Below, one piece after another: positions 4,186-64,000 of a stretch of DNA of 64,000 nt. Below the pieces are notes generated by a model. It saw only the letters and a program-made list of their open reading frames with translations. It did no database searches and was not told the origin of the DNA. How positions within the stretch are numbered: the stretch's first letter is position 1; each line of letters begins with the position of its first letter. The DNA lies in IMG/VR virus record IMGVR_UViG_3300032240_001991, positions 248,001-312,000 of that record; one strand, written 5' to 3'. The translations under genes were made by a program, and so were the position numbers.

Positions 4186-5268
4186 ATGGCAGAAAAAATC
4201 TCTTCAAATCGCACCGTTAGTCCTAACGAAGCGAAAAAGGCACTTCGCAAGTGCATTAAAATTCAACGCCCAGTTTTTATCTGGGGTCCTCCGGGTATTG
4301 GTAAGAGCGATGTTGTGCACCAAATTGGTAATGAACAAAATCGCGAAGTAATTGATGTTCGGTTGAGTCTTTGGGAACCCACTGACATCAAAGGCATTCC
4401 TTATTATAATTCTACTCTTAACAGCATGGTGTGGGCACCACCTGTTGAATTGCCTACTGATCCAGATAGTACCGCTATTCTTTTCCTTGACGAGCTTAAT
4501 TCTGCTGCACCTGCTACGCAAGCTGCTGCCTACCAGTTAGTTCTCAATCGTCGAGTTGGCACATATGTACTACCTAAAGGTGTTAGTATTGTTGCTGCTG
4601 GTAACCGCGAAACTGACAAGGGTGTTACCTATCGTATGCCAGCGCCGTTGGCTAGTCGATTCTTGCATCTTGAACTGCGTACTGATTTTGAAGATTGGTT
4701 GTATTGGGCTACCTCTAACAACATCCACGAACAGGTTGTAGGTTATCTAGGATTTGCTAAACAAGATCTTTATGATTTTGATCCTCGTGGTTCTAGCCGT
4801 AGTTTCGCTACGCCGCGCACCTGGAGTTTTGTAAGCGATCTTCTTCAGGACGACGATCTTGACGACAATACGCTTACTGATCTTGTTGCTGGTGCAATTG
4901 GTGAAGGACTTGCTGTTAAATTTATGGCGCATCGCAAAGTTGCAAAACAGATGCCAAATCCAACAGACATCCTTAACGGTAAGGTAACTAAATGTTCTAT
5001 TAAAGAAGTATCAGCGATGTACTCGCTTAACATTAGCCTTTGCTACGAACTTCAAGAACTTGATCGTAAGAAAAACAAAGATTGGGACAAGATGGCAGAT
5101 AACTTCTTCCGTTTTATGATGGACAACTTCCCAACTGAGCTAACTGTTATGGGTGCAAAGATTGCTCTTACTAACTACAACTTGCCGTTTGATGCTAGCA
5201 AGCTTAAGAATTTTGACGAGTTCCATCAGAAGTACGGTAAGTACATTATTCAGGCTATGGAGGGTTAA
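4186..5268 (+). CDS. MoxR/dynein-related AAA+ ATPase
   Basis: Walker A GPPGIGKS, Walker B LFLDELN, sensor AAGNR, arginine finger region PLASRF. Confidence 0.9.
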   Translation: MAEKISSNRTVSPNEAKKALRKCIKIQRPVFIWGPPGIGKSDVVHQIGNEQNREVIDVRLSLWEPTDIKGIPYYNSTLNSMVWAPPVELPTDPDSTAILFLDELNSAAPATQAAAYQLVLNRRVGTYVLPKGVSIVAAGNRETDKGVTYRMPAPLASRFLHLELRTDFEDWLYWATSNNIHEQVVGYLGFAKQDLYDFDPRGSSRSFATPRTWSFVSDLLQDDDLDDNTLTDLVAGAIGEGLAVKFMAHRKVAKQMPNPTDILNGKVTKCSIKEVSAMYSLNISLCYELQELDRKKNKDWDKMADNFFRFMMDNFPTELTVMGAKIALTNYNLPFDASKLKNFDEFHQKYGKYIIQAMEG

Positions 5269-44541: not shown

Positions 44542-44792
44542 TAAACAAGTACAAAGAGCTACATGAACAATTACTAGACTTATTAGTAGAGTATCATAAT
44601 GCTCATGTTAGATTTTTAGATAGACAGAATAGTTATAATTGCAGCCACTTGATTCCTATAACAAAAAAAATAGGAAGACTTGTTAAAGAAATGAGAAAAC
44701 ATAATTTTGAGCTACGGCAAAGTTTATTAGCAGAAAAACGTAGTAGAATATCAAAACAAAAGGAAAAAAAGAAAAATGTCAAACACACTTGA
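44538..44792 (+). CDS. basic helical protein, possible divergent Hc1-like paralog
   Basis: IGRLVKEMRK aligns with VGKLVKARRN of the next gene; Lys-rich tail. Confidence 0.55.
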   Translation: MINKYKELHEQLLDLLVEYHNAHVRFLDRQNSYNCSHLIPITKKIGRLVKEMRKHNFELRQSLLAEKRSRISKQKEKKKNVKHT

Positions 44793-44973
44793 AAATTTAA
44801 AACAGGCACTTGAATCAGCTCTAGCAGAAGATGCTAAGTTTTCTGGCGGCAATAATGCAGCAGGAACACGAGCTCGTAAAGCGTTGGCAGAAGTTGGTAA
44901 ATTAGTTAAGGCACGCCGTAATGAAATTACCGCAGAAAAGAACGCTCGAAAGGATGCTAAGGCAACAAAGTAA
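44776..44973 (+). CDS. histone H1-like protein (Hc1 family)
   Basis: KFSGGNNAAGTRARKAL.E+.KL.K..R.E motif characteristic of Hc1-like proteins. Confidence 0.8.
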   Translation: MSNTLENLKQALESALAEDAKFSGGNNAAGTRARKALAEVGKLVKARRNEITAEKNARKDAKATK

Positions 44974-44974
44974 G

Positions 44975-45400
44975 TTGACCTGGCTGTATCAAGGCAAAGA
45001 AGTTACAGAACTTCCTGAGGATTGTGTTGGATTTATCTATTTGATTACTAATACAATCTCAGGAAGGATGTATGTTGGAAAAAAATTAGCAAAATTCTCA
45101 AAAACAAAATACAAAACAGTAAAACTTAAAAACGGCAACAAGAAAAGAAAGAAAATTAAAAGCAAAATAGAATCAGACTGGCAAACTTATTATGGCTCCT
45201 CAGACGAATTAAACGAAGACATTAAACAACTAGGCAACGAACATTTTAAACGCGAAATACTATACTACTGCACAAGTAAGGCACAAACTTCATATCTTGA
45301 AGCAAAAGAACAATTTGACAGGCGTGTTTTAGAAACAAATCAATACTATAACGGACATATACGTGTTCGTGTCCATGGCTCACACATAATCAAAAAATAA
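44975..45400 (+). CDS. stand-alone GIY-YIG (Seg-like) nuclease domain protein
   Basis: GFIYLITN..SGRMYVGKK, YYGSS, FKREIL, SYLE, YYNG; probable TTG start at 44975 (MTWLYQG) right after the Hc1 stop; no C-terminal NUMOD/HTH domain. Confidence 0.8.
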   Translation: MTWLYQGKEVTELPEDCVGFIYLITNTISGRMYVGKKLAKFSKTKYKTVKLKNGNKKRKKIKSKIESDWQTYYGSSDELNEDIKQLGNEHFKREILYYCTSKAQTSYLEAKEQFDRRVLETNQYYNGHIRVRVHGSHIIKK

Positions 45401-45429
45401 CATCAAGGCACATTAAACAGCACTAAAGG

Positions 45430-45770
45430 TTGACGGGCCAGTTATAATACCGTTGTGGAAAAAGCGGGGAGTAACCGCACACGTAACACGTTGAGCCGCT
45501 TTGCTGCATGCAAAGATAGGATTGGCGTAGGATGAATGCTGTCATTCGTAAAACACTGCTCTAAAACACCTTGGGGATCAGGAACGAGCCCAGGGCATTA
45601 TACATATATAATGTGTCGCAGTAGGTAAGGAAAAGTGCAGAGTCCTTAGAGCTACAGTGTATAAACACCTACTTCCACGTCTTGGCTAGTGAAACTCACA
45701 TGAAAACCGTCCAAGAATAGACAGGAACCAGTAAAAAGGTTCCGTCTGACCAGCTCAATCTACATGAATA
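45430..45770 (+). ncRNA. candidate large structured non-coding RNA (multi-helix, pseudoknotted), family unassigned
   Basis: No ORF of 60 aa or more in the track; about 44% GC by hand count; more than 10 helices, including long-range GUGGAA/UUCCAC, UUGAGC/GCUCAA, ACACU-GCUCUAA/UUAGAGC-AGUGU and AGUAGGU/ACCUACU. Strand inferred from the upstream operon and 3' hairpins. Confidence 0.65.
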
Positions 45771-45784
45771 TCTTAAAAAGAAAA

Positions 45785-45834
45785 CTGCTTCGAGCTGATA
45801 AGCGAAGAAGCAGGTGAGCGTTAGCTCACCTTTC
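45785..45834 (+). terminator. double hairpin closing the ncRNA region (possible intrinsic terminator)
   Basis: CTGCTTC...GAAGCAG stem, then AGGTGAGC-GTTA-GCTCACCT followed by a short TTC. Confidence 0.5.
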
Positions 45835-45836
45835 AG

Positions 45837-45844
45837 TATAAATA
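45837..45844 (+). promoter_or_regulatory. T4-type late promoter TATAAATA
   Basis: Exact T4 late consensus upstream of 45871. Confidence 0.7.
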
Positions 45845-45870
45845 AAACATACTATTAGGATTTTATAGTC

Positions 45871-46731
45871 ATGCGTATTACCCAATTGCTTAATGAAGAA
45901 GAATTAGATGAAATAGGAATGAAAAGTATTGGCTCAGCTGCTGCTAAATTAGGCAGAGGTGCAGCCCTTGGAGTTGGAGCAGTAGCAGGTGGACTAAGAG
46001 GCATGGCTACCGCAGCTAAACAAGGGTATGATGTTGGCAAAGCTGCAACTGGACAAGGACGATTACCAGCAGCAGGAACAACATGGGGATTTGGGAATCA
46101 ATACGTAGGACCAGCAGGCGCACAGGCACCAAGCGGAGGTGGAGCTGCACAGCCAGCAGGTGGCCAAGCACCTAATTTACAAGATCAAATTAAAGATAAA
46201 CAAAAGCAGAGAGACGCAATTGATCAAGAAATTCAACAGTTAAGATCTCAAATGTCTGCTGCTCCGCAAGGACCTTCGGGCACTACAGGTACCACTGGAC
46301 CATCAAGTACTACAAATGCGCCAACCGGACCATCAAGTACTCCTAATGCACCAAATACACCGCCAGCACCTAATGCGCCAAATACACCGCCAGCACCTAA
46401 TGCACCAAATGCTCCAAAACCACCAAAGACTCCAAAACCTAAAGCACCGCCAGCACCTAATGCGCCAAATACACCGCCAGCACCTAATGCACCAAATGCT
46501 CCAAAACCACCAAAGACTCCAAAACCTAAAGCACCGCCAGCACCTAATGCGCCAAATACACCACCGGCACCAAAACCACCAAAGACTCCAAAGACTCCGC
46601 AGCCTAATCTCAATGTACAGCCTGGCGGAAAGAATGCGCCACTGGCACCAAATGCGCCAAAGACTCCGGGAACCTCTACAGCTGAGAGCTTTGATCGTTT
46701 ATTAGATTTGGTTAAGAAATTACAACGTTAA
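45871..46731 (+). CDS. Pro/Ala/Gly-rich low-complexity protein, probable internal virion protein
   Basis: MRITQLLNEEELDE N-terminus, short coiled coil, PNAPNTPPA / PKPPKTPKP repeats; late promoter and AGGA SD. Confidence 0.7.
   Translation: MRITQLLNEEELDEIGMKSIGSAAAKLGRGAALGVGAVAGGLRGMATAAKQGYDVGKAATGQGRLPAAGTTWGFGNQYVGPAGAQAPSGGGAAQPAGGQAPNLQDQIKDKQKQRDAIDQEIQQLRSQMSAAPQGPSGTTGTTGPSSTTNAPTGPSSTPNAPNTPPAPNAPNTPPAPNAPNAPKPPKTPKPKAPPAPNAPNTPPAPNAPNAPKPPKTPKPKAPPAPNAPNTPPAPKPPKTPKTPQPNLNVQPGGKNAPLAPNAPKTPGTSTAESFDRLLDLVKKLQR
46360..46562 (+). repeat. 87-nt perfect tandem repeat (about 2.3 copies) in coding sequence
   Basis: Units start at 46360, 46447 and 46534 and encode a 29-aa Pro-rich unit. 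Confidence 0.9.
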
Positions 46732-56946: not shown

Positions 56947-57019
56947 AGCCTACATAGGGTAGGTTTATGCAGAACCTAACTGCGTATCGACATAGAACGT
57001 CAACATAAGGAGAAAACAA
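56947..57019 (+). promoter_or_regulatory. candidate structured 5' leader RNA
   Basis: Follows TAAATA (56934-56939). Hairpins 56947-56965 and 56966-56986 have complementary loops UAGG/CCUA, then a small GAC/GUC hairpin and SD AAGGAG. Confidence 0.55.
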
Positions 57020-57706
57020 ATGGGACGTCCAATTAAGAAGAAATATTTTGGATTTGGAAATCCAGACGGTGTAGGTGGAGAAGCGTTTGCATCTCTCGTT
57101 GTAACTAACACCGCAACAAACGCAGGATACAGTACAACTACAGCAGTTACATGGGTTGCATCAAGCCCGCAGTTAGTAGGAGGCACTCCTGCTGCTGGTA
57201 CCGCTGCTGTTTCTTTTGTTACTGGTCAAGGCCGTATACAATCCTTAGGCATCACTACTGCGGGTACAGGTTATACCAGCACCGCTAGTGTAACACTAAC
57301 TTTTACACCTGCTCGAGTAGGCGGCACTGCTGCAACATTTGTACTAAACTTATCATCTGCTGTAACAAATACTATAGCTGCAAATGCATGGGTTCCAGTA
57401 TCAGGAACTCAGTCATTAATAGCAGAGATTTTAAAGCAGAAAGCTTCACATCGTTATCGTGTAGCAACTTCAGAAGGTACTGGAGTTTGCCAACTAGTTG
57501 CTAGAGCGCCGGCAGCTGGCGGCGAAATGACGATTATTGCAACTGATAGTGCAAGTAATCAATACTATGTTACTAAATTAACTGCACGCAAGGCTGTAGT
57601 TTATCAGAAGTCAGGTTCAGGATATCAGTTTACAAACGGTACTGAAGTAGGCTGGAACTTAACCGCAGCACAAGCTAACGTCTCAGTTCTAGTAGCATCT
57701 AACTAA
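57020..57706 (+). CDS. virion structural protein
   Basis: MGRPIKKKYFG N-terminus, Thr/Ala-rich, ILKQKA..RY.V motif; late promoter. Confidence 0.7.
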   Translation: MGRPIKKKYFGFGNPDGVGGEAFASLVVTNTATNAGYSTTTAVTWVASSPQLVGGTPAAGTAAVSFVTGQGRIQSLGITTAGTGYTSTASVTLTFTPARVGGTAATFVLNLSSAVTNTIAANAWVPVSGTQSLIAEILKQKASHRYRVATSEGTGVCQLVARAPAAGGEMTIIATDSASNQYYVTKLTARKAVVYQKSGSGYQFTNGTEVGWNLTAAQANVSVLVASN

Positions 57707-60597: not shown

Positions 60598-63500
60598 ATG
60601 GCCATCGGTCGAATCTCAGGTCCGCTATTAGCTAAAAATCTTTTAAGAGATGGCATAGACCTTGCATTTGAAACAGATTTATTATACTTAGATGTAGCCA
60701 ATGGGCGCATCGGTGTAAGAAAAAATAATCCTTCGTACGAACTTGATGTTAACGGTACTATCAATGCTAAAAATTTAAGAGTAGTATATACCGGACCAGG
60801 CAGCGGGAAAGCAACGCTTGGCAAGTTAGAAATTACATCAGGCACTATTACTACTACAGTTGGCCCAATAAACATTCAACCAAGTGGTAATGAAACGATC
60901 AATCTTGTTGGCGACACAACTGTTACCGGAAATCTTCACGCTACTGGAAATATAACAGCTGATGGTAATATTACTTTAGGAAATAATACCGCAACTGACG
61001 TTGTTATATTTGAATCTGAAATTGGATCCTCTTTAATACCGGCAGCAGATCAACAATATTCGTTAGGTAGTCAAGAACGTGCATGGCTTGATGCCTATGT
61101 GTCAACATTAGTTGCAAATCAACTTTCAAGCACCAGCACATTAAACATTAACTCTGGTGCCAATCTTGTACAGATTAATTCAGACCTTAAGGTAAATGGA
61201 CAAAATCCCTTAGGCACCGCTCCAGTTATCACTAATGTCTTGTTTGTTACAATGGACGGTAATGACACTAATGATGGACGAGCAGCTGACGCAAGTCGTG
61301 CCTGTAAAACAATTTCAGGAGCAATACGTAGTCCTTATTATCGACCAGGTACTTTAATTAAAGTATATAGCGGACATTATTTAGAGAATAATCCGTTATT
61401 ATTACAACCAAATACAGCAGTTGTAGGAGACGATCTAAGAACAACATCTATTGAACCAATTAATAAGACACAGGACTTATTCCATGTTCAAAGCGGTTGC
61501 TATATTGCGCAAGTGCAATTTTATAATGGACGCAGCGGATTATTACCCGGACCATATGTTAACGGTACTAATAGAGGTGCATATTGCACAGCATTTCCTC
61601 CACAAGTAGGAGGAAATAAGATTGACGTTTATCAATCACCTTACATACAGAACTGTACTAATCAAAGCGGTCCGTGGTTAGTTGACGGAACAATGTTTGT
61701 ACCTAACCAAACGGTACAAATTCCTCAAGCAGTTGGTACAACAGTATTTGACTCTAACACAACTACCATTGTTGTTACAATAACAACAGGCACAGTTGTT
61801 CCGGGGTTACATGTTATTAGCGGACCCCAAGACGTAGGATTTACTAATGCGAGAACATTATTATTGTCAAATCTTGCATTTATACAAGACCAAACTGTTG
61901 CTTGGGTAAATCATCAGGTAAAAACTAGTAGCACAGTTTACATACCTCAGCTAGCTACCACAACAAATTTTACAAATTTTACATACGATCAAGCTAAATG
62001 TTATCGCGATGTAGGATTAATTTTACAAAATGTAGCCTACGACGCAACTTTTGGCGGAAACGAAAAAGCCGTTGAAGCTGGGTTAGCTTATTGGAACGGC
62101 GTTATTAACTTAATTGAAGGGCAGCAAGGACAAACTACTGCGGCAATTAATTACATCAATACATTAAGTCAAGCAATTATCACAAATACTACTGTAACAA
62201 ATCTATACAGTTCATCAACTGCACAGATTATTAATACAGCGTTAGTGAACGGTGTTATTGCTAGCGAAGAAATTACTAGCGCAATTGGCACTATAATTAC
62301 AATTATCAATGACGGACCTATTGCCGCACCGCCTATCTTTATAAGCTGCGGACCTGAAACGCCGTTAGTTAGCGCAGAACTATTATTACAACAAAATCGT
62401 AAATTCTTGCAAGGCGAAGTTACTGCCTATGTAGATGCAACCTATCCAACATTTGAATACAAGAAAGATTATTGCTATCGTGATGTTGGATTGATTGTTG
62501 ATGCAGTAGCTCAAGACATTATTGTAGGCGGCAACACAAAATCTATTGAAGCAGCATTAAGTTATTATACAGGCGGTAAAGGTGATAGCAGCGTAGCTGA
62601 AACAGCAATAGTCAACAACTTTAATTTAATTAAAAATATTATACAAAATGGTCCATCAGTAGCTCCAGATCCTGTAAGCGGTCCTAATTTAGGGACAGGA
62701 TTTTCTAACGCACAGGATATATTACTTGCTAATATCTTCTTTGTGCAAACAGAAGTTAGCGCATATGTAAGAAGCTTATTTGACAACACATTTAGATTAA
62801 CACAATTACAACAAAATTTATGCTACAGAGACATTGGCACTATACTTACTGCAATTGCTGAAGATACAGCAGCTGGCGGTAATGTTAATACTGTTTACGC
62901 AGGATTACAATATTTTAATGGTTCTGTAAGTGTGCTACCAGGCAATCAAACAGAAAAAACAATTCTCACTTTAAACTATATGCAACAGCTCTGTGTTAAT
63001 ATTATTAAAAATATTCAAAACACAGGGCTGTATCAAGTTTTAATTCCGCAGGTATTTGGAGATTATACCGGTACTGATCAAGCTAACGCAGTTAACGCTA
63101 ATATTGAATTGATCACTGACATTATAACATTGGGACCAACCGTTGTTACATCGTTGTACCCAATCTCTCAATCGATGACAACTGATGTTAGAAACATAAA
63201 TGCATTTAATTTATTAACAGCAAACAAATCTTTTCTTGCTGCAGAATTAACCGGTTGGGTTGACACTACTTTTTCAAAAGGTTTTAATTATAATACAGCA
63301 ACTTGCTATAGAGATACTGGGTTAATTGTTGACAGTTTAGCTTGGGACTTGTTACAACAAGACACTAGTCAATCAATCTTCTCAGGACTTCAATACTATA
63401 ATAAATCAGGATACACTGGTTCAATTAATAAAGAATTGACAACAACTACCGCAGCTATTAACTATGCTAAAGAATTAGCAATGAAGGTAGTTGTCAACAG

Positions 63501-64000
63501 TACAGTAACTAATTTACAAACAGCAACTCTACAGGTATTTAATTTAGTTAATCCTGGATCGCCGGTAACAACTGGTACTGTTGGAACACTGTTCAATACT
63601 GTTACTAACATATTAGTAAATGGCACTGCTGGAGTTACTAATCAAATCATACCTAACAATACAGCATCTGTTGTAACCGGTATTGTTAATGCTTACAATT
63701 TATTACAGGCTAATAAATCCTTTATAGAAGACGAAGTTATTGCTTATGTAGACTTGACTACTGGCGGATTTAGTTATGATCAACCTAAGTGTTATAGAGA
63801 TGTTGGGTTAATTGTTGATAGTTTAGCAGAAGACTTGTTATTCAACGGAAGTAGTCAGAGTAATTTTTCTGGATTACAATATTGGGCACAAGGATCTACA
63901 AGTATCCCAGGAGAACTTAATACAACAACTGCGGCAATTAGTTACGTAAGAGACCTTGCAGTAAAAGTTGTTGTTGGTGATACAAGTGGCACAAGATATC
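60598..64000 (+). CDS. giant virion fibre/structural protein (over 1134 aa, 3' truncated; absent from ORF track) with a beta-helix start and tandem CYRD repeats
   Basis: ATG 60598 after GAGGAG; no stop in this frame in the translated stretches or the ORF track. Sequence includes MAIGRISGPLL..., FVTMDGNDTNDG...KTISGA...GHYLE.NP...VVGDDLR (pectin-lyase-like start), SPYIQNCT, then helical repeats. Confidence 0.85.
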   Translation, partial: MAIGRISGPLLAKNLLRDGIDLAFETDLLYLDVANGRIGVRKNNPSYELDVNGTINAKNLRVVYTGPGSGKATLGKLEITSGTITTTVGPINIQPSGNETINLVGDTTVTGNLHATGNITADGNITLGNNTATDVVIFESEIGSSLIPAADQQYSLGSQERAWLDAYVSTLVANQLSSTSTLNINSGANLVQINSDLKVNGQNPLGTAPVITNVLFVTMDGNDTNDGRAADASRACKTISGAIRSPYYRPGTLIKVYSGHYLENNPLLLQPNTAVVGDDLRTTSIEPINKTQDLFHVQSGCYIAQVQFYNGRSGLLPGPYVNGTNRGAYCTAFPPQVGGNKIDVYQSPYIQNCTNQSGPWLVDGTMFVPNQTVQIPQAVGTTVFDSNTTTIVVTITTGTVVPGLHVISGPQDVGFTNARTLLLSNLAFIQDQTVAWVNHQVKTSSTVYIPQLATTTNFTNFTYDQAKCYRDVGLILQNVAYDATFGGNEKAVEAGLAYWNGVINLIEGQQGQTTAAINYINTLSQAIITNTTVTNLYSSSTAQIINTALVNGVIASEEITSAIGTIITIINDGPIAAPPIFISCGPETPLVSAELLLQQNRKFLQGEVTAYVDATYPTFEYKKDYCYRDVGLIVDAVAQDIIVGGNTKSIEAALSYYTGGKGDSSVAETAIVNNFNLIKNIIQNGPSVAPDPVSGPNLGTGFSNAQDILLANIFFVQTEVSAYVRSLFDNTFRLTQLQQNLCYRDIGTILTAIAEDTAAGGNVNTVYAGLQYFNGSVSVLPGNQTEKTILTLNYMQQLCVNIIKNIQNTGLYQVLIPQVFGDYTGTDQANAVNANIELITDIITLGPTVVTSLYPISQSMTTDVRNINAFNLLTANKSFLAAELTGWVDTTFSKGFNYNTATCYRDTGLIVDSLAWDLLQQDTSQSIFSGLQYYNKSGYTGSINKELTTTTAAINYAKELAMKVVVNSTVTNLQTATLQVFNLVNPGSPVTTGTVGTLFNTVTNILVNGTAGVTNQIIPNNTASVVTGIVNAYNLLQANKSFIEDEVIAYVDLTTGGFSYDQPKCYRDVGLIVDSLAEDLLFNGSSQSNFSGLQYWAQGSTSIPGELNTTTAAISYVRDLAVKVVVGDTSGTRY
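61840..64000 (+). repeat. five helical protein repeats with invariant CYRD
   Basis: Cys codons at 61999, 62473, 62821, 63304 and 63790 (spacing 158, 116, 161, 162 aa). Confidence 0.9.

What the first reader, a model, noticed from the sequence alone, without database searches (positions are those of the whole stretch)
45401..45834. Unassigned ~350-430 nt highly structured, pseudoknotted non-coding element
This is the only long gap in a densely coding window, about 44% GC (160/360 by hand over 45421-45780). Hairpins seen: UGACGG/CCGUUG 45431-45455; GCGG/CCGC 45464-45478; CUUUGC/GCAAAG 45499-45515; AUGAAUG/CAUUCGU 45532-45549; CCUUGGG/CCCAGGG 45569-45595; CAUUAUA/UAUAAUG 45596-45613; AAGGA/UCCUU 45627-45647; UCUUGG/CCAAGA 45680-45716; AGAC-A-GGAACC/GGUUCC-GUCU 45719-45747. 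Long-range helices seen: GUGGAA 45455-60 with UUCCAC 45673-78; 12 bp 45553-64 with 45646-60 (3-nt bulge); AGUAGGU 45620-26 with ACCUACU 45667-73 (crosses the previous helix); UUGAGC 45491-96 with GCUCAA 45753-58 (crosses the first). There is an ACAUGAA direct repeat at 45698 and 45762, and the joiners are A-rich. A few helices share bases and cannot all form fully at once. Inference: a large ornate RNA of ribozyme-like complexity that I cannot match to tRNA, tmRNA, RNase P or group I/II introns.
Basis: partly seen in the sequence, partly recalled or inferred. Interest (0 to 1): 0.85.

Follow-up and report, generated by a model that had tools for sequence, protein, structure and literature searches.

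The report
Large pseudoknotted phage RNA, Polynucleobacter-1 relative
The gap holds a real, roughly 430-base folded non-coding RNA of an uncultured T4-like phage; it is a divergent form of a widespread phage RNA whose commoner version begins with the known but function-less "Polynucleobacter-1" motif, and it carries two copies of a 7-base motif that always change together.

Summary
Window 45405-45835 (+) is a conserved, non-coding, highly structured RNA. It has at least 190 relatives in IMG/VR, and 31 of 59 RNAalifold pairs show compensatory changes. Two pseudoknots have compensatory changes, one of them new (45417-22 with 45537-42). G·U outnumbers A·C 213 to 26 in paired cells, which fixes the + strand.

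It is not wholly unassigned. In 73 of 158 relatives the 5' third of the homologous gap is Rfam RF01718 (Polynucleobacter-1, function unknown). The window's own 5' domain does not hit that model, but its 3' module is shared. I file it as a new variant of a known kind.

- **Family architecture:** variable 5' domains, a central pseudoknot domain, and a universal 3' module.
- **3' module:** a heptamer (ACAUGAA here) occurs twice and is identical in both copies in 166 of 170 loci, across at least 16 variants.
- **Bacterial relatives:** Rhodobacteraceae carry a promoter-bearing relative, often upstream of a 188-aa tyrosine recombinase gene.

Function is unknown. My best guess is a trans-acting RNA that uses the twin heptamers as a bivalent recognition element. 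No transcript data could be obtained.

The parts
45405..45835 (+). The whole RNA: from the conserved AAGGCA start just after the stop codon of the upstream gene to the U-tract after the terminator
   Evidence: Conserved block in 25 full-length relatives. No ORF. G·U 213 versus A·C 26 in paired cells fixes the + strand.
45417..45422 (+). 5' strand of pseudoknot PK-A (ACAGCA); pairs with 45537-45542
   Evidence: 6 pairs, 3 with compensatory changes (ACAGCA/UGCUGU, CUAACA/UGUUAG, CCAACA/UGUUGG), 99% canonical.
45428..45431 (+). GGUU, predicted closing helix with GACC at 45748-45751
   Evidence: RNAalifold prediction. It is invariant or changes on one side only, so it is not validated.
45431..45455 (+). 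Hairpin H1 (UGACGG / CCGUUG) with the conserved loop GCCAGUU..UAAUA
   Evidence: 3 of 6 pairs compensatory, 99% canonical.
45454..45483 (+). H2 (UGUG/CACG) enclosing hairpin H2b (GCGG/CCGC, 45464-45478)
   Evidence: H2 changes UGUG/CACA to GAGU/ACUC in L143 and L158. H2b has 4 of 4 pairs compensatory.
45488..45528 (+). H4 (ACGUUGA / UUGGCGU) enclosing a variable hairpin region (CUUUGC/GCAAAG at 45499-45515 in the window)
   Evidence: 4 of 7 pairs compensatory. Relatives carry one to three other hairpins inside it.
45530..45547 (+). H5 (GGAUG / CAUUC); its loop 45535-45542 supplies the 3' strand of PK-A
   Evidence: 4 of 5 pairs compensatory.
45553..45564 (+). 5' strand of the long-range helix H6; pairs with 45646-45660
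   Evidence: Cognate duplex energy -11.2 versus non-cognate -6.5 kcal/mol. Only 8% of non-cognate partners do as well.
45569..45595 (+). H7 hairpin with the invariant loop AGGAACGA
   Evidence: 6 of 6 counted pairs compensatory.
45596..45613 (+). H8, a variable A/U-rich hairpin
   Evidence: Relatives have hairpins of very different length at the same place.
45620..45673 (+). H9 (AGUAGGU 45620-26 / ACCUACU 45667-73), which crosses H6 to form a pseudoknot and encloses H10 (AAGGA/UCCUU, 45627-45647, loop AAAGNNCAGAG) and the 3' strand of H6 (45646-60)
   Evidence: H9 changes U:A to C:G in L199 and L086. H10 changes AAGGA/UCCUU to UGGG/CCCA.
45680..45716 (+). H11 (UCUUGG/CCAAGA); its loop carries repeat copy R1 (ACUC + ACAUGAA, 45694-45704)
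   Evidence: U:A changes to C:G in relatives. Support is weak, because the helix is absent in L055.
45719..45747 (+). H12 (AGAC-A-GGAACC / GGUUCC-GUCU)
   Evidence: Conserved, 96% canonical, one-sided changes only in the window's subfamily. MI shows covariation at 45724-26/45740-42 across 133 sequences.
45758..45768 (+). Repeat copy R2 (AUCU + ACAUGAA) in the linker after the GUCUGACC element
   Evidence: The R1 and R2 heptamers are identical in 166 of 170 loci, with at least 16 variants. The search pattern did not require identity.
45785..45813 (+). H13: outer stem CUGCUUCG/CGAAGAAGCAG with the family-wide apical motif UGAGCG..AGCGAA
   Evidence: Cognate -5.7 versus non-cognate -2.3 kcal/mol. 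The motif is conserved in phage and bacterial relatives.
45813..45836 (+). Terminator-like hairpin GGUGAGC-GUUA-GCUCACC followed by UUUCAG
   Evidence: 6 of 6 pairs compensatory. The strict consensus scan did not list it because the U-tract is short.
45837..45844 (+). TATAAATA, the T4 late-promoter consensus, for the downstream gene 45871-46731 (adjacent, not part of the RNA)
   Evidence: Read from the sequence and conserved in relatives. The consensus itself is established T4 knowledge.
44921..45400 (+). Upstream gene: GIY-YIG nuclease domain protein (SegE-like, catalytic domain only)
   Evidence: PF19835, E = 2.4e-33. Directly upstream of the RNA in 75 of 94 pattern-selected loci.

Best explanation
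The gap encodes a roughly 430-nt structured non-coding RNA read on the + strand.

**Transcription.** It is most likely made as the tail of the rightward gp47-gp46-small ORFs-GIY-YIG transcription unit. It ends at the hairpin 45813-30, just before a T4-type late promoter.

**Fold.** It has three parts.
1. A 5' domain (45405-45552), held together by a leader-to-loop pseudoknot.
2. A central domain (45553-45679), in which two long-range helices cross.
3. A 3' module (45680-45835) shared by the whole family.

**Family.** It is a divergent member of a family of at least 190 RNAs from uncultured T4-like phages. The commonest form begins with the Rfam motif Polynucleobacter-1. A relative with its own promoter lies in Rhodobacteraceae genomic islands.

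**How it works (inferred, not shown).** It acts in trans as a folded RNA or RNA-protein particle. Its specificity comes from the two copies of a lineage-specific heptamer (ACAUGAA here). One copy sits in the H11 loop and the other in the linker after H12. Together they would bind two copies, or two identical halves, of one partner, either nucleic acid or protein.
For: **Real and structured.**
- 166 nhmmer hits in 200 fetched viral loci.
- 31 of 59 RNAalifold pairs have compensatory changes.
- The canonical fraction is 0.955, against 0.832 (maximum 0.849) in 500 column shuffles.
- Cognate beats non-cognate duplex energy for H2b, H4, H5, H6, H7, PK-A and H13.

**Strand.** 213 G·U against 26 A·C in paired cells.

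**Family link.**
- The window alone finds the 3' module of L002-L008 at E = 1.8e-12.
- Those loci and others hit RF01718 at 87-115 bits, against a gathering score of 37.
- 73 of 158 loci carry that domain at -300 to -320 from R1.
- The gene order is the same throughout.

**Trans-acting gene.** The bacterial relatives sit in intergenic DNA. Three of them (L247, L259, L297) show by eye a promoter-like TTGNNN-18-GATAAA, and all end in a terminator hairpin.

**Twin motif.**
- R1 equals R2 in 166 of 170 loci, with at least 16 variants.
- The R1/R2 pairs are among the highest MI pairs of the alignment, next to stem pairs.
- Only 8 of 120 chance pattern hits in bacterial genomes have equal copies, and five of those are true members.
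- More distant clades have other motifs, again shared in part between both positions.
Against: - No transcript evidence. Only DNA runs hold the sequence, and no RNA run was listed.
- No promoter was found directly upstream in the phage, so a purely cis role as a 3' UTR is not excluded.
- No partner for the heptamer was found. There is no consistent cis complement, and no cognate enrichment of complements or copies in about 1.2 Mb of flanks.
- The predicted unpaired probability of R1 and R2 (0.48 and 0.50) is hardly above the RNA's mean of 0.42.
- The variable positions are mostly purine-to-purine changes. That fits a protein reader as well as base pairing.
- The window's 5' domain gives no RF01718 hit even at E = 10. 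Homology of that part is not shown.
Confidence: 0.45

Rival explanations
1. A cis-acting element at the end of the early/middle operon. On this reading it is a long structured 3' UTR that protects the transcript from exonucleases, or that sets termination versus read-through into the late genes at the early-late boundary.
For: The element lies directly after the last ORF of a co-oriented gene string and ends in a hairpin with compensatory changes, just before a late promoter. No separate promoter was found in the phage. Weinberg et al. scored Polynucleobacter-1 as probably cis-regulatory.
Against: About 430 nt with two pseudoknots is far more than a stabiliser or terminator needs. The upstream gene varies: another ORF sits between SegE and the RNA in L012 and L055, and 19 of 94 pattern-selected loci lack SegE directly upstream, though about five of those look like chance matches. 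The downstream gene is not conserved. The bacterial relatives sit in intergenic DNA, three of them with a promoter-like site read by eye. This reading also does not explain the co-varying heptamers.
Confidence: 0.2
2. A self-assembling RNA-only particle of the kind shown for ROOL, GOLLD and OLE. Many copies would join through loop-loop contacts, and the conserved loops and heptamers would be the contact surfaces.
For: The size, the ornate fold, the phage and mobile-island setting, the modular 5' domain (GOLLD also has alternative 5' halves) and the invariant loops GCCAG, AGGAACGA and AAAGNNCAGAG all fit. The precedent is bioRxiv 10.1101/2024.12.08.627333 (abstract seen).
Against: There is no sequence or model similarity to ROOL or GOLLD. 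The heptamers are not self-complementary in the window's subfamily: only CAUG is (read from the sequence). Nothing here tests oligomerisation.
Confidence: 0.1
3. A guide-bearing RNA that supplies DNA recognition to a neighbouring DNA enzyme lacking its own binding domain. The enzyme would be the GIY-YIG nuclease in phages and a 188-aa tyrosine recombinase in bacteria. The twin heptamers would read two identical half-sites or two partner sites.
For: The GIY-YIG protein is catalytic domain only (PF19835 covers residues 21-147 of 159). It is adjacent in 75 of 94 loci. In bacterial relatives, 15 of 25 loci with enough downstream sequence carry the recombinase and/or a cargo gene downstream on the same strand. 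The recombinase aligns only to the catalytic half of Xer proteins. The R2 core ATGAGAT recurs 3-4 times in the 250 nt upstream of that gene in one clade.
Against: The same short GIY-YIG protein is found in 458 cultured phages, and the closest one (Melnitz) has no such RNA downstream. Several metagenomic loci have the protein without the RNA, and others have the RNA without the protein. FimB/E-type invertases of about 200 aa work without RNA (established knowledge; weak match). No cognate target was found in phage flanks. The ATGAGAT cluster is limited to one clade.
Confidence: 0.08
4. A self-processing RNA (ribozyme) that cuts or joins at the two identical heptamers and releases the 64-nt piece between them.
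For: The fold has ribozyme-like complexity. Two identical sites 64 nt apart flank a conserved hairpin.
Against: It matches no known ribozyme model. No internal guide co-varies with the heptamers. No read data exist to show ends or joints.
Confidence: 0.07
5. A DNA-level feature rather than an RNA. The options are iteron-like protein sites, a recombination or homing site, or the decayed C-terminal half of a once longer SegE gene.
For: Direct repeats that change together are typical of protein-binding iterons. The position beside a GIY-YIG gene would suit a homing target.
Against: Compensatory changes, with G·U strongly favoured over A·C, run through almost the whole element, including around R1 and R2. 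Indels are not in multiples of three, and no frame is kept. The GIY-YIG protein has the same length where the RNA is absent.
Confidence: 0.04

Closest known systems
Polynucleobacter-1 RNA motif (Rfam RF01718; Weinberg et al. 2010, PMC2864571)
   Same: It occupies the same genomic slot: directly downstream of the same small GIY-YIG-type gene, in uncultured freshwater and estuarine T4-like phage DNA. The 2010 paper placed it downstream of gene family GOS11034, with possible homology to PSSM2_218. Sister loci of the window carry RF01718 as the first 140 nt or so of the homologous gap, and they share the window's 3' module. The first hairpin has a similar stem context and a similar G(G)CCA...AUA loop. 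Function is unknown in both.
   Different: The window's 5' domain does not score against RF01718 even at E = 10. The published motif is 141 nt, and its '3' half is not always detected'. The RNA described here is about 430 nt, with two pseudoknots, a central domain and a 3' module carrying twin heptamers, none of which is in the Rfam model. In 2010 the motif had not been seen in a purified phage. Here the context is clearly T4-like: gp46/47, a baseplate hub and a tape-measure-like gene.
GOLLD and ROOL (giant ornate RNAs of phages and prophages)
   Same: They are large, multi-domain RNAs of unknown function, carried by phages and mobile islands. They have a conserved part joined to alternative variable halves.
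   Different: There is no detectable similarity. This RNA is smaller, is not next to tRNA genes, and its oligomeric state is unknown.
Guide-bearing RNAs of mobile DNA enzymes (IS110 bridge RNA, IscB/TnpB omega RNA = HEARO)
   Same: A structured RNA is encoded beside a DNA-cutting or DNA-joining enzyme, with short lineage-specific segments displayed in loops. This is a resemblance in layout only.
   Different: No IS110, IscB or TnpB gene is present. There is no HEARO hit. The two variable segments are identical to each other instead of matching two different DNA partners, and no target was found.
Group I introns with GIY-YIG endonuclease ORFs (T4 td, nrdB)
   Same: A GIY-YIG ORF lies next to a pseudoknotted RNA in a T4-like phage.
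   Different: There is no split host gene. The Hc1-like gene upstream is complete (profile positions 2-56 of 57), and the downstream gene has its own late promoter. No structured RNA lies upstream of the ORF, and there is no Intron_gpI hit.

Membership tests
Polynucleobacter-1 RNA (RF01718) | Scores at or above the Rfam gathering threshold (37 bits) against the covariance model | tested here: not met
   No hit in the window at gathering or at E up to 10 over 45200-46000. None in the eight other window-type loci scanned (L012, L017, L055, L086, L120, L143, L161, L181). Nine sister loci score 87-115 bits.
Polynucleobacter-1 RNA (RF01718) | Lies downstream of the GOS11034 / PSSM2_218-like gene | tested here: inconclusive
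   The RNA follows a conserved SegE-like GIY-YIG gene in 75 of 94 unbiased loci, and RF01718 hits start 20-40 nt after that gene. I could not check that this gene is family GOS11034. Its homologues in cyanophages fit the paper's remark.
Polynucleobacter-1 RNA (RF01718) | Homology of the rest of the transcript with RNAs that carry the motif | tested here: met
   A single-sequence nhmmer search with the window hits L002-L008 at E = 1.8e-12 over window 45719-45853. Profile hits reach position 180 onward in L021 and L029. The shared features are R1, a hairpin, the UGAC element, R2, H13 and the terminator.
Group I intron | Interrupts a gene (flanking exons), has a P1-P9 core, and matches Rfam Intron_gpI | tested here: not met
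   The flanking genes are complete and separate. There is no Rfam hit.
tRNA / tmRNA / RNase P RNA | Detected by ARAGORN or by the Rfam models | tested here: not met
   ARAGORN finds 0 genes in the window. There are no Rfam hits.
GOLLD / ROOL / OLE / HEARO / raiA | Match to the family covariance model | tested here: not met
   No hit at gathering, or at E up to 10 in the region. None in 30 related loci.
Intrinsic terminator (3' end of the RNA) | G+C-rich hairpin followed by a U-tract | tested here: inconclusive
   The hairpin 45813-30 is strong (-15 kcal/mol) and all 6 counted pairs show compensatory changes. The tail is only UUUCAG in the window, and the consensus scan did not list it. Relatives have longer U/A-rich tails.
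Trans-acting small-RNA-like gene | Own promoter and terminator, plus a stable transcript | not testable with these tools
   A promoter-like site was seen by eye in three bacterial relatives only. No RNA run holds the sequence.

The most novel reading that the evidence does not exclude
The RNA is the specificity subunit of a new kind of RNA-directed DNA enzyme. Its twin heptamers would pair with two identical half-sites, or with the shared core of two partner sites. That would aim a catalytic-domain-only GIY-YIG nuclease in T4-like phages, and a 188-aa tyrosine recombinase in Rhodobacteraceae islands, where variable cargo genes lie between the RNA and the recombinase gene.
Probability: 0.07. 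Interest if true: 0.93.

Novelty: new variant of a known kind. Interest (0 to 1): 0.62.

Why it matters
Bacterial and phage RNAs above 400 nt with several pseudoknots are rare. Most that have been explained are ribozymes or cores of RNA-protein machines.

This work makes three points.
- The 141-nt Polynucleobacter-1 motif, an orphan since 2010, is only the front third of a much larger RNA.
- That RNA belongs to T4-like phages and also to bacterial islands.
- Its 5' domain can be exchanged, while a 3' module with two co-changing heptamers is kept.

The twin heptamers are a concrete handle for experiments: swap them and look for the partner. One host of the bacterial form, Nereida ignava CECT 5292, is a sequenced isolate, so a test should be possible there. 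If the RNA proves to guide or regulate the neighbouring DNA enzymes, it would be a new class of RNA-directed system. If not, it is still one of the largest structured phage RNAs with strong comparative support.

Tried and rejected
- **Known families.** Rfam at gathering score and at E up to 10, and ARAGORN, found nothing for the window.
- **Cultured phages.** blastn in 'distant' mode, with the window RNA and with a Polynucleobacter-1-type RNA, gave no match. The closest cultured carrier of the upstream gene, Methylophilales phage Melnitz, has only a 148-nt gap there.
- **Pseudogene or decayed C-terminal domain of SegE.** Rejected. The protein has the same length where the RNA is absent, and the gap shows RNA-type covariation.
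- **Group I intron with an ORF.** Rejected, because no gene is split.
- **Small ORFs or translational bypass between the two heptamers.** Rejected. Many heptamer variants have no AUG, and no frame is conserved.
- **Cis partner for the heptamers.** There is no exact reverse complement. The wobble-tolerant matches do peak at one place: a conserved RUUGUUU at the 3' edge of the Polynucleobacter-1 domain, in 32 of 63 loci. That segment is also the 3' strand of a helix with compensatory changes, and it does not vary with the heptamer.
- **Trans partner in the flanks.** Cognate against non-cognate counts were 96 versus 81 for complements and 134 versus 115 for copies, with no positional cluster.
- **Hypervariable arms-race site.** Rejected. 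The heptamer differs in only 1 of 68 pairs of RNAs that are 85% or more identical.
- **Thermodynamic accessibility of R1 and R2.** Uninformative.
- **T4 endonuclease II identity of the upstream protein.** No PDB sequence hit.
- **Defence-system models for the bacterial neighbours.** Only weak P-loop matches.
- **Transcript evidence.** No RNA run was listed.
- **Not done.** I did not build covariance models or run the count of structure pairs. A full-length structure line would have meant typing a very long string, so I computed pair counts, shuffles and cognate/non-cognate duplex tests in scripts instead.
Full report
**1. What is at the coordinates**

The window is part of IMGVR_UViG_3300032240_001991, a 326-kb contig of an uncultured T4-like phage. 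The portal gene is about 80% identical to that of the 121Q-type jumbo phages.

The finding lies between two genes. Upstream is a 159-aa GIY-YIG protein (44921-45400, PF19835 SegE_GIY-YIG, E = 2.4e-33). Downstream is a Pro/Ala/Asn-rich gene (45871-46731). Further upstream, on the same strand, are SbcD/gp47-like and SbcC/gp46-like genes, an 84-aa ORF and an Hc1-like 65-aa ORF. Further downstream are a baseplate-hub gene on the other strand and an 880-aa tape-measure-like gene.

- No + strand ORF of 40 aa or more lies in 45401-45870.
The window as a whole is 0.370.
- The gap is not the only ORF-poor stretch. 60876-62564 and 62790-64000 also lack ORFs of 70 aa or more.

**2. Is it more than chance?**

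The + strand folds to -127.2 kcal/mol, against -110.5 ± 5.0 for dinucleotide shuffles (z = -3.33). The - strand gives z = -2.53.

The decisive evidence is comparative. I fetched loci through the upstream protein and through a degenerate pattern for the two repeat copies. This gave 200 viral loci, of which 166 match an nhmmer profile of the element. Twenty-five distinct sequences align over its full length, at 55-99% pairwise identity (mean 66%).

On a 23-sequence alignment (A2):
- RNAalifold predicts 59 pairs, and 31 of them have changes on both sides that keep the pair.
- Over 14 helices, 95.5% of cells are canonical. In 500 shuffles of the 3' columns the mean is 83.2% and the maximum 84.9%.
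- Paired cells contain 213 G·U but only 26 A·C. The folding strand is therefore the + strand.
- For helices that sit in gappy columns I compared duplex energies. I paired each sequence's own two strands, then strands taken from different sequences. The results are below.

| Helix | Cognate (kcal/mol) | Non-cognate (kcal/mol) |
|---|---|---|
| H6 | -11.2 | -6.5 |
| H7 | -8.8 | -4.8 |
| H2b | -6.0 | -2.9 |
| H4 | -7.0 | -4.1 |
| H5 | -5.4 | -1.5 |
| PK-A | -6.8 | -3.6 |
| H13 | -5.7 | -2.3 |

**3.

*Supported*
- H1, 45431-55.
- H2b, 45464-78, enclosed by a short helix UGUG/CACG (45454-57/45480-83).
- H7, 45569-95, with the invariant loop AGGAACGA.
- H10, 45627-47.
- H11, 45680-716, weakly.
- H12, 45719-47, conserved.
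- The long-range helix 45553-64/45646-60.
- The crossing helix 45620-26/45667-73. This is a true pseudoknot.
- The hairpins at 45499-515 and 45596-613 stand at sites where relatives carry other hairpins of quite different length.

*Corrected*
- The hairpin at 45532-49 has a different register. The pairing is GGAUG 45530-34 with CAUUC 45543-47. Its loop pairs with 45417-22 in the 5' leader. This second pseudoknot has three pairs with compensatory changes.

*Not supported*
- GUGGAA/UUCCAC is conserved but broken without compensation in three sequences.
- UUGAGC/GCUCAA holds in the window and a few relatives only. The 5' strand instead forms a helix with compensatory changes, 45488-94/45522-28, which encloses the variable hairpins.

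*Not validated*
- A closing helix GGUU 45428-31 with GACC 45748-51 is predicted, but it never varies on both sides.

The RNA ends with two hairpins, H13 (45785-813) and a terminator-like hairpin (45813-30), both with good comparative support. TATAAATA, the T4 late-promoter consensus, follows at 45837-44.

**4. What it is related to**

Rfam finds nothing in the window's gap, either at gathering score or at E up to 10. ARAGORN finds nothing either.

A scan of 19 related loci changed the picture. In nine of them, the first 140 nt or so of the homologous gap scores 87-115 bits against RF01718, Polynucleobacter-1 RNA, whose gathering score is 37. The supplement of Weinberg et al. 2010 describes that motif as follows:
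- it comes from freshwater or estuarine metagenomes and from one Polynucleobacter genome;
- it lies mostly downstream of gene family GOS11034, with possible homology to cyanophage gene PSSM2_218;
- its 3' half is not always detected;
- it had not been seen in a purified phage, and no function is known.

No later paper in the library mentions it.

| 5' domain type | Loci |
|---|---|
| Polynucleobacter-1 domain | 73 |
| Window's kind | 27 |
| Third, shorter kind | 42 |
| Mixed or unclassified, including a few chance pattern matches | 16 |

Examples of the mixed forms are L104, L117, L128 and L166, which combine the third 5' domain with the window's central domain.

The 3' module is common to all true members. 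It runs in this order: R1 in a hairpin loop, a hairpin, a UGAC element, R2, H13 with the motif UGAGCG..AGCGAA, and the terminator. The window sequence alone finds this module in Polynucleobacter-1-type loci at E = 1.8e-12.

The window's RNA is therefore a variant of the same family with a different 5' domain. The first hairpins are similar in stem context and loop, but I could not show that the 5' domains are homologous.

**5. Context**

The gene order is kept throughout: gp47, gp46, small ORFs, the GIY-YIG gene, the RNA, a late gene, the hub gene on the other strand, then the tape-measure-like gene. The late gene itself is not conserved.

- Among the 94 loci found by the RNA pattern alone that have enough upstream sequence, 75 have the GIY-YIG gene directly upstream.
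- In some loci another ORF sits between the gene and the RNA.
- Several loci have the gene but coding sequence instead of the RNA.
- The protein has homologues in 458 cultured phages, mostly cyanophages. It has the same short length there. The closest of them, Methylophilales phage Melnitz (55% identity), has no such RNA.

The link between gene and RNA is therefore frequent but not obligatory.

**6. The twin heptamers**

- In 166 of 170 loci, the heptamer after ACUC (R1) equals the heptamer after AUCU (R2). There are at least 16 different heptamers of the form R-S-A-U-R-A-N. The search pattern allowed the two copies to differ.
- In the mutual-information ranking of a 133-sequence alignment, the R1/R2 pairs rank among the very highest, next to stem pairs.
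- Chance pattern hits in bacterial genomes mostly differ between copies. Only 8 of 120 are equal, and five of those eight are true members.
- More distant clades, which my pattern missed, carry other short motifs at both positions: GGCAU, GGUCAA, GGAAAU, UGACA.
- The similarity extends weakly over about 26 nt, so the 3' module looks like an old tandem duplication of a 'site plus hairpin' unit. The neighbouring fixed differences (ACUC versus AUCU) argue against simple gene conversion.
- The heptamer is not hypervariable. It differs in only 1 of 68 pairs of RNAs that are 85% or more identical.

I found no partner. There is no cis complement, and no excess of cognate complements or copies in about 1.2 Mb of flanking DNA. 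One candidate is a conserved RUUGUUU at the edge of the Polynucleobacter-1 domain. It can wobble-pair with most heptamers, but it is itself part of a helix with compensatory changes and does not vary with them.

**7. Relatives in bacteria**

A scan of one genome per species found a window-type copy on a contig binned with a Crocinitomicaceae MAG. That contig is probably phage DNA.

The same scan found a fourth type of about 640 nt in Rhodobacteraceae:
- a Roseicyclus MAG, on an 817-kb contig;
- an Ascidiaceihabitans single-cell genome;
- two small contigs of the isolate Nereida ignava CECT 5292.

A metagenome scan for its heptamer (GGAUGAG) added 56 loci. Together with the four genome loci, 46 are of this type.

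In these loci the RNA sits in intergenic DNA. Three of them (L247, L259, L297) show by eye a promoter-like TTGNNN-18-GATAAA, and all end with H13 and a terminator hairpin.

The neighbours are as follows.
- Upstream there is often a clamp-loader-like AAA ATPase and two unknown proteins.
- Downstream, on the same strand, 15 of 25 loci with enough sequence have a 188-aa tyrosine recombinase and/or a 242-aa protein. The recombinase aligns only to the catalytic half of Xer proteins and has the size of FimB/E invertases.
- Between the RNA and the recombinase gene there are variable cargo genes: ParDE, a nucleotidyl transferase, or the 242-aa protein. The cargo is flanked by what look like inverted repeats, GGGTTGG and CCAACCC.
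- In one clade, the R2 core ATGAGAT recurs 3-4 times in the 250 nt upstream of the recombinase gene.

This is suggestive, but it is limited to one clade and was not tested further.

**8. How it most likely works**

*Shown:* a conserved + strand RNA structure of about 430 nt, a family with modular 5' domains, and a universal 3' module with two co-changing heptamers.

*Inferred:* in the phage it is transcribed as the tail of the early/middle unit. The only promoter-like site nearby is at 44462-91. It then acts in trans as a folded RNA or RNA-protein particle. The intergenic, promoter-like setting of the bacterial form supports this.

The strict identity of R1 and R2, across many variants and next to fixed flanking differences, is best explained by one reader that contacts both copies.

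I give about 0.9 to 'real structured RNA related to the Polynucleobacter-1-bearing family'. I give about 0.3 to the bivalent-recognition mechanism. The 0.45 for the whole statement follows from these two.

The rivals are a cis-acting boundary or 3' UTR element, an RNA-only assembly like ROOL or GOLLD, a guide RNA for the neighbouring DNA enzymes, a self-processing ribozyme, and a DNA-level element. They are weighed in their own sections.

No transcript data could be obtained. Only DNA runs hold the sequence, and no RNA run was listed.

**9. Verdict**

This is a genuine and unusually large structured phage RNA. It is a new variant of a known but unexplained kind. The new content is fourfold:
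- the full extent and fold of the RNA;
- the modular family architecture;
- the T4-like phage and Rhodobacteraceae island settings;
- the co-varying twin heptamers.

Interest is 0.62.

Noticed in passing
window 56948-57022 (+): The only Rfam hit at gathering score in the window is freshwater-2 RNA (RF02980, 58.7 bits, gathering score 49.9). This is another candidate RNA of unknown function from freshwater metagenomes.
   Followed up: no
window 60876-62564 and 62790-64000: About 3.1 kb holds only ORFs of 74 aa or less on either strand. There is no tRNA and no Rfam hit at E up to 0.1, and GC is ordinary (0.34-0.39). It could be a block of very small early genes, or further non-coding RNA.
   Followed up: partly
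window 44776-44973 (+): A 65-aa ORF matches the chlamydial histone H1-like protein Hc1 (PF07432, E = 7e-13) over nearly the full profile. A homologue is found in 30 of the related phage loci.
   Followed up: no
window 45871-46731 (+): The late gene downstream of the RNA encodes a 286-aa protein. Its centre is a tandem array of Pro/Ala/Asn-rich units (87-nt period, 2.7 copies, 95% matches; 27-nt and 9-nt sub-periods). tblastn at E = 1e-5 found no homologue in the related loci, which carry other genes in that slot.
   Followed up: partly
window 45775-45846 versus L002-L008 (about 4800-4870): The last 72 nt of the RNA (H13 plus terminator) are 92% identical to Polynucleobacter-1-type loci whose remaining RNA is far more diverged. 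The RNA looks mosaic, as if its 3' end had been exchanged by recombination.
   Followed up: no
L360:884-5234; also L259, L297, L333, L339, L363: In marine Rhodobacteraceae-type loci the 640-nt relative of the RNA lies in a same-strand string. The order is a clamp-loader-like AAA ATPase, a 263-aa protein, a 244-aa protein, the RNA, variable cargo (ParDE, a nucleotidyl transferase, a 242-aa protein), then a 188-aa tyrosine recombinase. In L360 a 509-aa integrase and metG follow. The cargo seems flanked by inverted GGGTTGG / CCAACCC sites, which suggests an invertible or cassette-capturing segment.
   Followed up: partly
L360:4418-4650 (also L333, L259, L349, L352): The heptamer ATGAGAT, the core of repeat copy R2 of the bacterial-type RNA, occurs 3-4 times in the 250 nt upstream of the recombinase gene. 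Three of the copies are about 100 nt apart, and there is one inverted copy. Other clades have one copy there.
   Followed up: partly
L247 and L311 (Nereida ignava CECT 5292): A sequenced isolate carries two copies of the bacterial-type RNA on two short contigs (1.7 and 4.1 kb). One copy lies about 1.2 kb from a tRNA gene. The short contigs suggest a repeated or mobile region. The strain should offer an experimental handle on the family.
   Followed up: no
window 45437-45449 (loop of H1): The conserved loop GCCAG...UAAUAC, and the later stretch AUGUCGAC...AGGUUG in relatives, recall 16S rRNA segments (the 530 loop and helix 26) as I remember them. This is from memory only. No SSU rRNA model scored in the region, and I did not test it further.
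   Followed up: no
L035, L043, L057, L061, L070 (about 4420-5000): A more distant clade of the RNA was missed by my repeat pattern. It keeps the overall layout but has other motifs at the two repeat positions (UGACA, GGUCAA, GGAAAU, GGCA, GGCAU). In L070 and L061 a third similar copy forms the 3' strand of the closing stem of the Polynucleobacter-1 domain.
   Followed up: partly
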